Origin: Orbicella franksi
Lineage: Eukaryota
Assembly: GCA_964199315.1 (NCBI GenBank)
Contig: OZ116698.1
Location: 16,492,001-16,556,000 of the forward strand
Direction of reading: 5' to 3'
Length of the DNA: 64,000 nt
Part shown: piece by piece, positions 34,041 through 64,000 of the stretch
How the letters are laid out: each line of letters begins with the position of its first letter
How positions within the stretch are numbered: position 1 is the first letter of the stretch
Notes under the pieces: generated by a model
Told to the model about the DNA's origin: nothing
What the model saw: the letters and a program-made list of their open reading frames with translations, nothing else
Databases searched by the model: none
Made by a program: the position numbers and the translations under genes

Positions 34041-36367
34041 ATGAAGGCTATACTCTGGTTGGCAGCCATTTTACTCGGTAAATACAAAGTTTATTAGCTA
34101 TGTTAATAGTTTTTGAATTAACCGCGGTATGTTGAGAAAAATACCTGGATGTAGGACGAAAGGCTTTTTGGTTTCCCTCCGAGTCATTAGGTATTTACTC
34201 TTTTTATTACTTTGCAGTGGCTGTGGCTGATATCTCGGCTAAAAGCATAAAACACCCAAAACAACATAAGTCAGAGAAGAAGCGCCATCACGACGAAGGC
34301 CATCGCCGACAACCACCTGCGGTGGCTCCTACTGCCGCTCCTGCACCTCCAGGTCCCACTATCGGACCACCCGCTGCTCCAGGCGCCACACCTGCAGTAG
34401 CACCAGCTGCTGCTGCCCCAGCACCTGCTGCACCAGCCCCTGCTCCTGCTGCACCAACACCTGCAGTTGCACCAGTTGCATCTACTGCAGCCCCAGCACC
34501 CGGACAGGTGCCAGCAGTAGGAGAACCAACCACTGCGGCACCTGCCCCTGCCGCTGCACCTGCAGTTGCCGCTGGAGCAACACCTGTTGTAGCACCAGGT
34601 ACATCTACTGCCGCACCTGCCCCTGCTGCTGCTCCTGCCCCGGCTGCTGCACCCGCAGCTGCCGCTGGAGCAGCACCTACTGTAGGACCAGGTGCGTCTA
34701 CCGCGGCACCTGCTGCCGCCGCCGCCGCCGCCGCTCCTACTCCAGCTGCTGCTCCTGGACAGGCACCAGTGGCAGGAGTAGCTACTACTGCAGCACCACC
34801 AGCAGTTGGTGCTACAACGGCCGCCCCAACACAACCTGCTGTCGAAGCCGCCACCGCCGCGGGTGCACCAGCTGCAGCCCAACCTACCACTGCTGCGCCT
34901 ACTGGTAAGCTGATAATTTGATAAGCTGATATTTCAATTTTCACCGGATATTTTAATCTTTATAATTCCGCTGTGTAGAAGCTCTTTTCAGGAAGCTGGT
35001 GTCAATTATGTCAACACTGATAGATTATTTTCTCCAGGTTGAGACTATGTTTTTGAAATTGTAATATTTCTGTTTTTCAGCTCGTTGGCTATATTTTAAT
35101 GTATCGAAAACCTGTTAACCCGACCCTAACACTAAGTAAAAAACTCAATACAAAACGAATCATCATTGCTACCGTCTAAACCGTGGTAGTTCTGGAAATT
35201 TATAAAGACATCATGGGAATTTCACCGAGATTGTGTTTTTCGTTACGTCTCCTTCCTGGGAGGACCCTCTATAAACATGACAGGACGTTATCTCTCTTCC
35301 TTTTAAAGAATAAACTTTGTCGGTAGGCACCGCTCAGGGTAGTGCTTGAACCTAACTGACTGCTGTTAGAGTCACGCTCTCATCGCGATAGCTTTTGGCG
35401 TCATCGGATGAATTTTCTTTTCTATTTTTCCGGCAAGCACCCTGCTACTTTTTTTATGGGAGGATTCTCCTCTCCTATTGTTATTGATATTGTACGGAGA
35501 AACAAATGTTGATCACTTGGGATTCTTTCAAGTCGCAGTCGTAGTTTAAGTGGGCGTTAGGTCTTGTGGCCTGCAAACCCAGCCAGTCATTAGATTGTGA
35601 ACAAGCTTTCCTTTCCCTCCCCTTCCCCTCTCTTTGTTAGGCAGCCTTATAAATGCTTAGCCTGTTCATGGGTTTAGCAGAGATTCAAGCCAATGGTGAT
35701 TTTGGTGACGTTTTTGTTCTCCACTATTTGAAAACGTGATAAGATTCAGTTGCTAGTATACATAATGACGTGCCTAATATCTGTTTAACAATTAAACCTC
35801 TGAAAACAATCACATATCAAATAGTGATTGCAAAACAAGGACCATTAACCAATCAAAGCCTGAAGATAATTTGTGACTGGTAAGCGTGGGGAAGGTTAAG
35901 TAAGCCAATAGCGTTAAAGGTCAGTTTAGTTCTGTACCCAATTCGCTAAAAAGAGAATATCTTCACTCTCATAGGGAAACCATGTTTACGACGTTTTTCG
36001 TCCGATTTTATAATTTTCTACCGTCAATCGTCAGCTTCTCTATGAACAAAAGATAGCTGACTTTTTTTGTTGTATTATTACAGTTCCGCCCGAAATCACA
36101 CCAAGCCCTGTTCCCGCCAAAGACAAAGTGAATGATAAGACCGAGGAAAAGACGCACGCTAAAACACAGGACAAGAACAAGGATAAACACGAACACAAGG
36201 AGGACGAATCTGAGGAGATAGAACCTGAAAATAATGCTGAGGATGAATCTGAGAAGAAAGTAAAGGACAAATCTGAGAGTAAATCAAAAAATAAATCTGC
36301 GGAGAAGGAAAAAGACAAACCTGAGGAGAAGAAAAAAGACAAGACTGTTAAGAAGAGTCGTCATTGA
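34041..36367 (+). CDS. Secreted Ala/Pro/Thr-rich mucin-like protein with His/Lys-rich N-terminus and Lys/Glu/Asp-rich C-terminus, 3 exons, 335 aa
   Basis: Exons 34041-34077 (MKAILWLAAILL), 34218-34904, 36084-36367; all phase 1, 1008 nt in frame. Signal peptide MKAILWLAAILLVAVA, repeated T(T/S)AAPAPAAAP units. Confidence 0.85.
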
Positions 36368-37084
36368 TAGGACAAATATTTAGTAATATCCAAATCAATG
36401 ATCCTGGCTTGGACTTTAGAACAAAACCACTAATAAATATAATTTTGTCTGTTTTGGCGTATATTTTGTGACTGTTCTTTTCTGAATCACCAAACTGATC
36501 GAAAGAGAAGTAAACCTTTCATGATCGATTGGAAAAGAGTGACTTACGAATGCATCTTTTATTTTTACACATAGCATTTATTTACATAATGCAAGAGGCG
36601 CTAGTTGGGACAGCAAAAATACGAAGACAAAGATCATTGCATCGCGTAGTAAAGAAATGGTATAAATTAACACCACGAGTTCTTTTTCCAGTAAAAAACA
36701 CATAAGTATATGGCAAACTAGTCCAATATGAAAAGGAAAACTCTGATTGGCTCCTTGAGCTTGAATTAAACATGTTTAACTTACACGAAAGAGACCTGTA
36801 AAAAGTGAATAAATGCTTTACAAGAAATAACAAGAAAACCTGCGGTGATAAACATGAAGATAAAACGAATTGTTGGAAAACAAAAATTTTCTTTTATTAC
36901 TTGACGTTTCGTATGTTTCAACATATCTCTTTAGAATGCTTTAGAATGCTCAGCTTTGGCGCAGGCGCGTTTACCGAGAAAGGATCGCGGGAGAGTCATC
37001 GTAATGAATACTCTATTAAACGTCCGTATTGGGAAATATTGGTTTCGTTCTTTTTTATGCAAGCTCCTGGCGCGTTCCATAAAC

Positions 37085-37196
37085 TAGGCTTGAATACCAG
37101 CTGCTGTTCGGGAAAGGAGCCCGCGCTCCTCTCCCGAAGGGATTTCTCGGAGAGGAACGTAGACCGGACTCGATAGAGCGGCGGAAATCGAGCTTA
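37085..37196. mobile_element. Degenerate hairpin MITE (TAGGCTTGAATACCAGCTGCTG... / ...GCGGCGGAAATCGAGCTTA); second fragment at ~49790-49842
   Basis: Imperfect inverted ends. 49790-49842 (GGAGCGCGG..AACAGCAGCCAGTAATCGAGCC) resembles the reverse complement of this element's left arm. Confidence 0.5.
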
Positions 37197-62016: not shown

Positions 62017-63608
62017 ATGGCGCTGCTGGCACTGTTAGGGAGTTTTCAATGGCAAAGATGGATCTCTTTTCTCGTTCTTGCTTGTGCCGTCCTCGCCTAC
62101 AGGAAATTAGGTAATTGTCCTAATACGCTTCACTTCTGTGACAGTCTAATGCGTAGAGGCCCCCTTGTACAGTCAAACCTTTCATAATTGTTAACCTCGT
62201 TCCAGGTCAATTAATTTTACTATATTCCAACCCCATGTCACTTGACCCTCTTTTTGTCACTTAAGAATTATTTTACTTGTATTTGGTTTGCTGTTTAACT
62301 AGGTGGTCGCTTGCAAAGTTTTAGGACTTTAAGACATTTCACCTTTTCCCTGTCAAGTTCGAGATATTATTCCTTATCCTTCATTTCATACTTTATTTTT
62401 ATGTTAATTGTGAGAATCTGTCTTTATTTTAGAACAATATTCTCAAACCAAAGTTTCCCTCTATTTCTTGGTTGTACCTTAAAGAAAATTAGGTTACACC
62501 AGAAGTTAATTTTCTATGCTATTATAAACCTCTGATAACACTAAAATGTAACACTGTACTGAGATAATCGAAATATGGAAGGCAAGTGTCTCGCAAATGA
62601 CATTGGATTAACTCAATGAGTAGAGAAATAAACAAGAACGATCGACCCAATTAAACATAAAAATATGATTCATATCATTTTGTTGCGCCTTTTCTAAACG
62701 AGAAAATTGAGACAGATTTAATAAACGGATGTATGCAGGCGCCCCCACTGTTGGGTAACCATGTTTGTTTCCCTCCCTTCTGGTTGTTCGCTTTATGATC
62801 TTGCTGGTGCCTATTAACTTCACAATAAGGCTACATTTTTCTCACTTTATGCGTAGAAGATATTCCAGGAAACACAAGGCAGTTCATTTCTAAAATAAAC
62901 CACAATTGCCGAGACTTCAAGGGAGTTCTCAATAGATGTCACGTGTGGAAAGATATGGGTTTCTGCTTCAAATATCGTCGACAAATGCAGCACGTGTGCA
63001 ACAGAACCTGCCAGTACTGCAGTGAGTATTCTTTTGCCACACTGTCCTTGATGAGTAAATTTTTCAGTATAGGTTGATTGGTCACTGATGTAACAATGGA
63101 AAGTGGTGTAAAATTGGGAGAGGGAAATGCTTTGACTAATAATTTTACAGTTTGTGTCATTCATCGACTAAGCGTTTAGAACGTGCGCTTTCGTGCTTAC
63201 TGAATTTATTCATTTGCTTATTTGCTGATTTGCCTACTTAGTCATTTATTTATTTGTTTGTTTATTTACTATTTCTTCGCCGTAGAAGAAAAGTATATAC
63301 GATAGCAGAATTGCAAAACAAGTTATACGTTCTCTCAACAACTAAAGTGGAACTTGGCATTTTGTTGTAAAAAAAATTCTGTTTGTTATTAGTTCCAGGT
63401 CAGAAGCAATGGCAAGTTATAGACATAAAGGGAGTCTGGGGTGAAGTAAGAAAACCAGGCGTTGCGCATGGCATGTCGTCAGCGGTGCAGCCCAAGGTTA
63501 AGGCTCTAGCTGTACAAATTTTGGGAAAAGAAAGAGCGCCACAAGTCGACGATGCAGCCAGTGCTATAGCAACGCAGCTGGAAGATGGAATTGATCGCGG
63601 AATCTCAG
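62017..63608 (+). CDS. ShKT-domain protein with hydrophobic N-terminus; 3' end unresolved (may run out of the window)
   Basis: Exons 62017-62110 (MALLALLGSFQWQRWISFLVLACAVLAYRKL), 62857-63021 (NCRDFKGVLNRCHVWKDMGFCFKYRRQMQHVCNRTCQYC), then 63393 or 63399 to a weak donor at 63608 or read-through to the stop at 63718. Introns 1 and 2 are phase 1. Confidence 0.7.
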
Positions 63609-64000
63609 GTTTTAACCATAATCTCAGCGAACCTTGCTCTAACAAGAATAAAATACAGACATACATCCTTTATGTCTTGCCTCAAAGGACAATTTTTAAG
63701 AAGATCATCCCTAAATAAAAAAGGACCCTGGCTTTTATAGGAGAGACACCTAACCACATTTTTTTTTATTAGCTTTGCCTTCATGATACAAGAAAAAAAC
63801 ATTACAATCAATATGTAGAGGTTTGGCAGGGACATCGTAACAGCTAAGTAGCCAATTACTGCGGGCCCAGAAATAAAATATATGTAAAAAGAAAGAAAGA
63901 AAAACCACATTACATGCAGCACATTATTGGTACGTCTAGAAATCTTGTGGAGTTGCAATTCAAACAGACGGTTTTAAACGTTCGAGGATTGTCCGGATTG

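What the first reader, a model, noticed from the sequence alone, without database searches (positions are those of the whole stretch)
34041..63718. ~30-kb cluster of secreted ShKT, CAP and mucin-like genes: candidate venom/mucus defence locus
Seen: five of six consecutive genes begin with a signal-peptide-like exon. Together they encode six ShKT domains, three CAP domains and several low-complexity linkers. Every ShKT is on its own phase 1-1 exon of 114-165 nt. Known: ShKT (ShK/BgK Kv1 blockers) and CAP/CRISP proteins are recurrent venom and mucus components. Inference: a co-regulated gland-cell or cnidocyte locus evolving by local exon shuffling.
Basis: partly seen in the sequence, partly recalled or inferred. 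Interest (0 to 1): 0.7.

Follow-up and report, generated by a model that had tools for sequence, protein, structure and literature searches.

The report
Ancient conserved coral CAP/ShKT gene cluster
This stretch of stony-coral DNA holds a row of five genes for secreted proteins built from CAP and ShKT modules; at least four of them sit in the same order in sea anemones, so it is an old, conserved and unstudied gene block rather than a fast-evolving venom locus.

Summary
There are six ShKT domains, each on its own phase 1-1 exon (117, 120, 120, 165, 120 and 114 nt). There are three CAP domains, low-complexity linkers and five signal-peptide-like first exons.

Corrections:
- RNA junctions join ShKT1, ShKT2 and ShKT3 into one gene, so there are five genes (A-E), not six, and all five start with a signal-like exon.
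- Gene E runs past the window end.
- "Mucin-like" is an overstatement.

Evolution:
- The three CAPs are each other's closest relatives in the 497-Mb genome, but a tree puts their duplication before corals and sea anemones split.
- The ShKTs are not local duplicates. Each has a positional counterpart in sea anemones (49-68% identity) and is no closer to its neighbours (at most 46%) than to unlinked ShKTs.
- Order and orientation B-C-D recur in the anemone Actinostola. D and E lie head to head in Nematostella.
- Gene D (CAP, acidic linker, two ShKT, basic linker, CAP) matches Nematostella LOC116619814, which is uncharacterised.

There is no toxin-precursor signature and no cell-type evidence. 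The likeliest reading is conserved extracellular, non-toxin proteins.

The scan had already noted gene D on this stretch, and other CAP or ShKT arrays elsewhere in this genome.

The parts
34041..36367 (+). Gene A (predicted only). Exons 34041-34077, 34218-34904 and 36084-36367, giving 335 aa: signal-like start, then about 200 aa rich in Ala and Pro, then a Lys/Glu/Asp-rich tail. No Cys.
   Evidence: Canonical GT-AG borders, both introns in phase 1, frame open throughout. Composition. No Pfam hit. No homologue found, though the search was swamped by low complexity. No RNA test was possible.
38495..44878 (+). Gene B, 429 aa, 8 exons: 38495-38549 (signal), 39440-39460 (21-nt micro-exon), 40191-40307 (ShKT1), 41397-41615 (linker), 42648-42767 (ShKT2), 43467-43586 (ShKT3), 43997-44356 (TPSQNSTA repeats with 5 N-glycosylation sequons), 44601-44878 (conserved C-terminal part).
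   Evidence: Six introns are shown by RNA joints. The last intron is inferred; its exon is 83.5% identical in another coral and 42-59% identical in Actinostola. Pfam ShK hits.
47098..49134 (+). Gene C, 187 aa, 4 exons: 47098-47149 (signal), 47763-48046 and 48284-48442 (CAPa), 49066-49134 (C-terminal DDSEWFKDGSP motif).
   Evidence: Pfam CAP. Model. Colinear with Montipora foliosa XP_068691990, named 'GAPR-1-like'. Orthologue in Actinostola.
49955..58437 (-). Gene D, 1290 aa, 9 exons: 58437-58377 (signal), 57206-56758 (CAPc), 56420-54692 (acidic 575-aa linker), 54421-54308 (ShKT6), 53321-53202 (ShKT5), 52709-51849 (basic linker), 51137-50839 and 50648-50505 (CAPb), 50050-49955 (PDLMWFMDSSPY tail).
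   Evidence: Models. Colinear over its full length with a 1312-aa Logan protein (82%), Oculina LOC144664253, Stylophora LOC111324460 and Nematostella LOC116619814. RNA runs hold about half of the words of 50300-57300, which matches the exon share.
62017..64000 (+). Gene E, incomplete in the window. Exons 62017-62110 (signal or anchor-like), 62857-63021 (ShKT4), and 63399 to about 63607. A further exon lies about 210-360 nt past the window end.
   Evidence: Model. All three exons are conserved in another coral at 50-74%. Oculina ACROYT_G002717 is colinear up to ...DGIDRGIS and then continues in an exon found beyond the window.
58438..62016 (.). 3.6-kb interval between the divergently oriented starts of genes D and E. 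This is a candidate shared control region.
   Evidence: The head-to-head order of D and an E-type ShKT recurs in two other corals and in Nematostella. Regulatory function was not tested.

Best explanation
The locus is an old, conserved block of five neighbouring genes (A-E; B-E are verified, A is only predicted). They encode proteins with signal peptides, built from CAP and ShKT modules joined by disordered linkers.

Shown:
- The three CAP modules belong to one cnidarian subfamily. It is marked by an N-terminal GCDxxCQxEC motif, a phase-1 start and a following exon with a WF-DSSPY-type motif. The modules arose by local duplication before stony corals and sea anemones separated.
- The six ShKT modules were already distinct from one another at that time.
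- Gene order and orientation have been kept since (B-C-D in Actinostola, D/E head to head in Nematostella).
- Gene D is a two-headed protein. Its N-terminal CAP has lost all four residues of the CAP metal-binding tetrad. Its C-terminal CAP keeps them. Between the two lie an acidic linker, a pair of abutting ShKT domains and a basic linker. This pattern is the same in coral and Nematostella.

Inferred: the products act outside the cell as non-toxin secreted components. Candidate sites are surface or gland secretions, extracellular matrix or the cnidocyst matrix. The CAP heads would act as ligand- or lipid-binding ends and the ShKT domains as protein-interaction modules. Linkage may be kept by shared regulation.
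For: Domains and exon structure.

RNA junctions for gene B. Transcription of genes D and B in many coral RNA runs.

CAP paralogy: CAPb matches CAPa at 111.8 bits and CAPc at 73.3 bits, against 44.5 bits for the next locus in the genome. CAPc matches them at 76.1 and 58.3 bits, against 48.6.

CAP tree: there are three groups, each holding corals and sea anemones. Support is 98/97 for the C group, 100/100 for D N-terminal and 94/93 for D C-terminal. All three sit inside a 99/99 clade.

ShKT orthology: ShKT4, ShKT5 and ShKT6 are 66%, 68% and 59% identical to positional anemone counterparts. Identity among window ShKTs is at most 46%.

Synteny.

Full-length colinear D orthologues exist in Stylophora, Oculina, Actinia and Nematostella.

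Tetrad pattern: Y/Q/K/D in the N-terminal CAP against H/E/E/H in the C-terminal CAP, in both coral and Nematostella.

Domains are much better conserved than linkers: CAP 95% and ShKT 84-95%, against linkers 43-64%.

There are no dibasic sites beside the ShKTs.
Against: - No cell-type, tissue or proteomic evidence was obtained, so the functional part is inference from architecture and conservation.
- Signal peptides were judged by eye. No predictor was available.
- Gene A is unverified.
- In Nematostella, genes B and C are not within 10 kb downstream of D, so the block is not intact everywhere.
- CAP proteins are released from Nematostella nematocysts (NEP-16, NEP-17 and NEP-20; PMC3627010). 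A tube-anemone relative with a ShK-CAP architecture is filed as a toxin candidate. A venom or cnidocyst role is therefore not excluded.
Confidence: 0.6

Rival explanations
1. Venom or cnidocyte locus. The genes are expressed in nematocytes or venom gland cells. Their products are venom components: ShKT units would block potassium channels, and the CAP proteins would act like CRISP toxins.
For: CAP-domain proteins are released from Nematostella nematocysts, and NEP-16 is nematocyte-specific (PMC3627010). P0010 from Pachycerianthus (ShK plus a CAP of the same subfamily) is filed as a toxin candidate. ShKT2 has Lys-Tyr four residues before the fourth Cys, which is the spacing of the ShK dyad. A recent review lists CRiSP/CAP among the most widespread putative cnidarian venom families (PMC13608440).
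Against: The ShKTs are embedded in 190-1290-aa proteins with no dibasic cleavage sites beside them. The genes are one-to-one orthologues over a very long time, with 84-95% domain identity between corals; they are not lineage-specific, fast-evolving arrays. Surveys report no ShK-type neurotoxins in stony corals (PMC12745922). No link was shown between these genes and the NEP proteins.
Confidence: 0.15
2. Secreted innate-immune or antimicrobial set. The PR-1-type CAP proteins and the ShK-related domains would act against microbes at the coral surface, by analogy with plant PR-1 and the coral ShK-related peptides damicornin and AmAMP1.
For: CAPb's nearest solved relatives are GAPR-1 and plant PR-1 P14a. 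ShK-related antimicrobial peptides exist in corals (PMC12745922).
Against: There is no induction or activity evidence. The antimicrobial ShK relatives are short processed peptides, unlike these proteins. The nearby NLR is not part of the conserved block in the loci I examined.
Confidence: 0.12
3. Neighbours by inertia. The genes are real and related in part by ancient duplication, but linkage persists only because few rearrangements have hit this small interval. They share neither regulation nor function.
For: Nematostella lacks genes B and C next to D; an adhesion GPCR lies there instead. Only 20-40 kb around each orthologue was examined. I made no genome-wide baseline for microsynteny.
Against: The same order and the same strand pattern hold for three genes in Actinostola and for the divergent D/E pair in Nematostella and three corals. 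All members share one predicted destination (secretion) and one module set.
Confidence: 0.1
4. Skeletal organic-matrix genes. The acidic linker of gene D and the low-complexity gene A would help build the coral skeleton.
For: Linker 1 of gene D is acidic (pI 4.6, 14.6% Asp+Glu).
Against: Genes D, C, B and E have orthologues in skeleton-less sea anemones, and the D orthologue has the same acidic linker (pI 5.0). The acidity is mild compared with known coral acid-rich proteins (from general knowledge, not tested here).
Confidence: 0.03

Closest known systems
Nematostella vectensis LOC116619814 (XP_032240905/6, 'uncharacterized protein'), with Stylophora LOC111324460, Oculina LOC144664253 and Actinia tenebrosa 'protein piccolo-like'
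   Same: They are orthologues of gene D. The layout is the same: signal, CAP, long linker, two abutting ShKT, linker, CAP. The match holds domain by domain: N-terminal CAP 64.5%, ShKTs 59% and 68%, C-terminal CAP 66%.
   Different: Linker lengths differ more than twofold, so the proteins range from 1290 aa here to 2361-2693 aa in anemones. None has been studied; no paper in the library names them.
Human GAPR-1 / GLIPR2 (PDB 1smb), the name given to gene C's Montipora orthologue
   Same: Both are compact CAP domains of about 150 aa. GAPR-1 is CAPb's nearest solved structure by sequence (E 1e-9). His, Glu and Glu of the tetrad align in CAPb.
   Different: GAPR-1 has no signal peptide and sits on the cytosolic face of the Golgi (general knowledge). 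The proteins here have signal peptides, an extra N-terminal GCDxxCQxEC Cys motif and a C-terminal WF-DSSPY exon.
CRISPs (snake-venom and mammalian cysteine-rich secretory proteins)
   Same: Both are secreted and combine a CAP domain with a ShK-like cysteine-rich module. CAPc's best solved matches are the venom CRISPs pseudecin and pseudechetoxin.
   Different: In CRISPs the ShK-like domain follows the CAP directly through a short hinge. Here the ShKTs are hundreds of residues away or in separate genes. The CAP closest to CRISPs by sequence (CAPc) lacks the whole tetrad.
Nematostella nematocyst CAP proteins NEP-16, NEP-17 and NEP-20 (Moran et al. 2013, PMC3627010)
   Same: They are cnidarian secreted CAP proteins. 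They show that some CAPs are cnidocyst contents.
   Different: They are described as short single-CAP proteins without other domains. I could not retrieve their sequences, so their relation to genes C and D is unknown.
Sea-anemone ShK-type potassium-channel toxins
   Same: They share the six-Cys ShKT fold signature. One domain (ShKT2) has Lys-Tyr at the dyad spacing.
   Different: The toxins are 35-37-aa peptides cut from small precursors. The domains here are uncleaved modules of large proteins, conserved as orthologues.

Membership tests
ShKT domain (Pfam PF01549) | Six-Cys pattern and a profile score above the curated cut-off (20.9 bits). | tested here: met
   All six have the pattern. Four score 31-38 bits. 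ShKT2 (18.1) and ShKT4 (19.3) fall just below the cut-off, but both have orthologues at 95% in other corals, and ShKT4 has one at 66% in Nematostella.
ShKT domain (Pfam PF01549) | Disulfide pairing C1-C6, C2-C4, C3-C5. | not testable with these tools
   This needs a structure or disulfide mapping.
ShK-type channel toxins | A small precursor with a propeptide and a dibasic cleavage site that releases a single 35-37-aa peptide. | tested here: not met
   The ShKTs lie inside proteins of 429, 1290 and at least 190 aa. The flanking residues show no KR/RR sites. Tandem ShKTs are joined by 1-2 residues.
ShK-type channel toxins | A Lys-Tyr functional dyad at the ShK position. | tested here: inconclusive
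   Only ShKT2 has K-Y four residues before the fourth Cys. ShKT4 has K-Y at another position. The other four have none.
CAP superfamily (Pfam PF00188) | Profile match above the cut-off (21.1 bits). | tested here: met
   31.0, 45.7 and 46.6 bits. Solved relatives are GAPR-1, PR-1 P14a and venom CRISPs.
CAP superfamily (Pfam PF00188) | The conserved His/Glu/Glu/His tetrad. | tested here: inconclusive
   CAPb has H/E/E/H. CAPa has H/A/E/H. CAPc has Y/Q/K/D. The Nematostella orthologue of gene D shows the same split.
CRISP subfamily | A CAP followed directly by a hinge and a C-terminal ShK-like ion-channel-regulator domain. | tested here: not met
   In gene D the ShKTs lie 575 aa after CAPc and 283 aa before CAPb. 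Gene C has no ShKT.
GAPR-1 / GLIPR2 | No signal peptide; a cytosolic, Golgi-associated protein. | tested here: not met
   Genes C and D start with hydrophobic signal-like exons, and so does the Nematostella orthologue of gene D.
Mucins | Long Pro/Thr/Ser-rich tandem-repeat domains. | tested here: not met
   Gene B has only four short repeats (S+T 24%, P 15% over 120 aa). Gene A is Ala/Pro-rich with 13% S+T.
Venom gene array | Lineage-specific tandem paralogues that diverge fast. | tested here: not met
   One-to-one orthologues occur in corals and sea anemones. The duplications predate their split. Domain identity between corals is 84-95%.

The most novel reading that the evidence does not exclude
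The block is a conserved regulatory unit of hexacorals. The divergent D/E pair and the adjacent B and C genes would be driven together in one secretory cell type, either a cnidocyte stage or a gland cell. Their products would assemble into one extracellular material. Gene D would be the long two-headed tether: its degenerate N-terminal CAP and intact C-terminal CAP would bind different partners, and the small ShKT and CAP proteins (B, C, E) would dock on it.
Probability: 0.15. Interest if true: 0.6.

Novelty: new variant of a known kind. Interest (0 to 1): 0.4.

Why it matters
ShKT and CAP hits in cnidarian genomes are routinely listed as venom candidates. This locus shows that a whole cluster of such genes can be an old, slowly evolving, syntenic set shared by stony corals and sea anemones. 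That pattern argues for a core extracellular role, not a toxin role. It also warns against annotating venom from domains alone.

The locus also supplies two testable objects. One is a two-headed CAP protein with one degenerate and one intact head, conserved across hexacorals and unstudied. The other is a small block of linked secreted-protein genes in which shared regulation can be tested in Nematostella, where genetic tools exist.

Tried and rejected
- Gene A homologue search: 8000 low-complexity candidates were scored and none passed. This says nothing either way.
- Exact look-ups of Nematostella isoform X2 and of the two Montipora proteins found no contig. One coral contig came without DNA.
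- Literature searches by locus names and by the Stylophora product name found no cnidarian paper.
- The Nematostella matrisome supplement lists two "CAPCL-like" GAPR-1-type genes (NV2.3951 and NV2.3157) under "putative venoms". I could not link either to LOC116619814 without sequences, so this lead is not used as evidence.
- GAPR-1-like names in coral and Exaiptasia studies could not be mapped to these genes.
- Logan and ENA proteins similar to gene C proved to be ORF calls on unspliced DNA, so they are not transcript evidence.
- Skeleton-matrix reading: rejected, because sea anemones have the same genes.
- Recent ShKT exon shuffling within this genome: rejected.
- RNA tests of genes A, C and E were not possible.

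
Full report
WHAT IS THERE

The window is C1:16492001-16556000 of a 497-Mb stony-coral assembly.

A six-cysteine scan found six ShKT-type patterns. Four are on the + strand and two on the - strand, and there are none elsewhere in the window apart from low-complexity noise. Pfam ShK scores four of them at 31-38 bits. ShKT2 (18.1) and ShKT4 (19.3) fall just under the 20.9 cut-off.

Pfam CAP matches three places at 31-47 bits. The long low-complexity ORFs have no family match.

Each ShKT lies between an AG acceptor and a strong GT donor in phase 1-1. 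The exon lengths are 117, 120, 120, 165, 120 and 114 nt.

Five Met-plus-hydrophobic openings end in a phase-1 donor.

GENE MODELS

I laid two RNA contig sets and two raw RNA runs on 38400-44399. They gave six GT..AG joints. The joints chain these exons:
- the signal exon 38495-38549;
- a 21-nt micro-exon, 39440-39460;
- ShKT1;
- a 219-nt linker exon;
- ShKT2 and ShKT3;
- the TPSQNSTA-repeat exon.

The locus has five genes, and all five have signal-like starts.

All models are in frame with canonical splice sites:
- A is 335 aa. It is predicted only.
- C is 187 aa, with a signal and one CAP.
- D is 1290 aa: signal, CAPc, 575-aa acidic linker, ShKT6, ShKT5, 283-aa basic linker, CAPb, short tail.
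- E has a signal or anchor-like start, ShKT4 and a tail.

My first models for C and D read through a last intron. Orthologues showed an extra final exon in each.

Gene E continues in an exon beyond the window end. No further ShKT follows in the next 9 kb.

RNA runs from many studies hold about half of the words of 50300-57300 and up to a third of 38400-44900. Six runs hold both stretches. This shows transcription. It does not show a cell type.

ARE THE MODULES LOCAL DUPLICATES?

CAP: yes, but the duplications are old.
- Searched against the whole genome, CAPb finds CAPa (111.8 bits) and CAPc (73.3 bits) ahead of every other locus (best 44.5). CAPc finds CAPb and CAPa (76.1 and 58.3 bits) ahead of the rest (48.6).
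- All three begin at the same phase-1 border with GCDxxCQxEC. Each is followed by an exon with a D/E-L-x-W-F type motif.
- A maximum-likelihood tree of 27 CAP domains places the gene C CAP, the N-terminal CAP of D and the C-terminal CAP of D in three separate groups. Each group contains both stony corals and sea anemones. Support is 98/97, 100/100 and 94/93, inside a 99/99 clade that also holds Hydra and tube-anemone sequences.
- The duplications therefore predate the coral-anemone split. From general knowledge that split is placed at roughly half a billion years ago.

ShKT: no.
- ShKT1, ShKT3 and ShKT6 each find their best non-self matches at unlinked loci (C1:10.51 Mb, C4:1.65 Mb and C8:17.36 Mb). 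Their window neighbours rank from fourth to beyond twentieth.
- I aligned 71 ShKTs from the window, from 30 unlinked loci and from five related loci. No two window ShKTs are more than 46% identical, which is no better than their identity to unlinked copies.
- By contrast, ShKT4, ShKT5 and ShKT6 are 66%, 68% and 59% identical to the ShKTs at the same positions in Nematostella or Actinostola. All six are 84-95% identical to those of other corals.
- The one sign of recent module duplication is in another coral. Its gene D carries three tandem ShKT5-like exons with pieces of the linker.

SYNTENY

A library-wide search with CAPc and follow-up look-ups gave loci from three other corals, Actinostola and Nematostella.
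- In Actinostola, a B-like gene lies on one strand (two ShKTs plus the conserved C-terminal part). The C orthologue follows on the same strand. The D orthologue then lies on the opposite strand (CAP, ShKT, ShKT, CAP). This is the window's order and orientation.
- In Nematostella, the D orthologue LOC116619814 has an E-type ShKT about 6 kb upstream on the opposite strand. Downstream there is an adhesion GPCR instead of C and B.
- Other corals show B-C-D with every exon and D/E head to head.

GENE D

Full-length colinear orthologues are annotated, none with an informative name, in Stylophora, Oculina, Actinia and Nematostella.

In both coral and Nematostella, the N-terminal CAP has Y/Q/K/D at the four tetrad positions and the C-terminal CAP has H/E/E/H. 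The tetrad positions were checked against the GAPR-1 alignment.

Linker 1 is acidic (pI 4.6 here, 5.0 in Nematostella). Linker 2 is basic to neutral. The linkers diverge fast (43-64% between corals), while the domains do not (84-95%).

FUNCTION

Nothing here marks peptide toxins:
- there are no dibasic sites beside the ShKTs;
- there is no lineage-specific expansion;
- the domains are strongly conserved.

Published coral surveys report no ShK-type neurotoxins, only ShK-related antimicrobial peptides (PMC12745922).

On the other side, CAP proteins are released from Nematostella nematocysts (PMC3627010), and a tube-anemone ShK-CAP relative is filed as a toxin candidate.

No paper names the orthologues.

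I therefore commit to conserved extracellular non-toxin components, possibly under shared regulation. The functional part is inferred. The evolutionary part is shown.

CONTEXT IN THIS GENOME

This is one of many ShKT clusters. Larger ones lie on C8, C12, C13 and C3, and CAP plus ShKT also co-occur at C12:3.6 Mb and 4.33 Mb. The scan has also noted other CAP or ShKT arrays.

What sets this locus apart is its conservation, not its size.

Noticed in passing
window 39440-39460 (+): A 21-nt micro-exon of gene B, shown by RNA joints. It encodes DCRAAPR and begins with the same nine bases as the ShKT1 exon (ATTGCCGTG). It may be the remnant of a truncated ShKT exon copy.
   Followed up: partly
L083:14601-16984: In another coral the gene D orthologue carries three tandem ShKT5-like exons (85%, 73% and 76% identical to ShKT5), each with a piece of the following linker. 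This is a recent internal module duplication that the window lacks.
   Followed up: partly
window 39800-40200, 40600-40800, 41000-41400: Patches inside gene B introns have word depth up to about 12,000 in RNA contig sets, with many loose ends. They look like repeat or transposon fragments transcribed from elsewhere.
   Followed up: no
window 56420-56395 (-), 50050-50020 (-), 49066-49100 (+): Each CAP module is followed by an exon that opens with a related motif: EDLHWFEP, PDLMWFMDSSPY or DDSEWFKDGSP. The motif is also present in the Montipora and Nematostella orthologues. It appears to be an undescribed C-terminal extension of this CAP subfamily.
   Followed up: partly
window 47763-48442 (+), 51137-50505 (-), 57206-56758 (-): The three paralogous CAP domains differ in their introns. 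CAPc has none. CAPa is split before VVDHF. CAPb is split after NHFTQ, 6-7 codons later. The Actinostola gene C orthologue is a single exon.
   Followed up: partly
window 42648-42767 (+): ShKT2 has Lys-Tyr four residues before its fourth Cys, the spacing of the channel-binding dyad of ShK. The residues are identical in another coral but shifted in Actinostola.
   Followed up: partly
window 25456-26088 (+): A 211-aa open frame is made of degenerate IPLYTLAYPC-type repeats and runs into a mirror-like YTRVY/KGIQGYT repeat. It is probably a tandem or inverted DNA repeat, not a gene.
   Followed up: no
window 17731-19756 (-): Reverse-transcriptase-like and other transposon-type open frames lie between the upstream NLR gene (8048-11071) and the cluster.
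   Followed up: no
PMC12549020, supplementary file 2: The Nematostella matrisome lists NV2.3951 ('CAPCL-like-1'), whose best Swiss-Prot hit is Mucin-1. It shows no signal in the held part of the single-cell tables and no mass-spectrometry values in the stored tables. It could be the D orthologue, but I could not link the two.
   Followed up: partly
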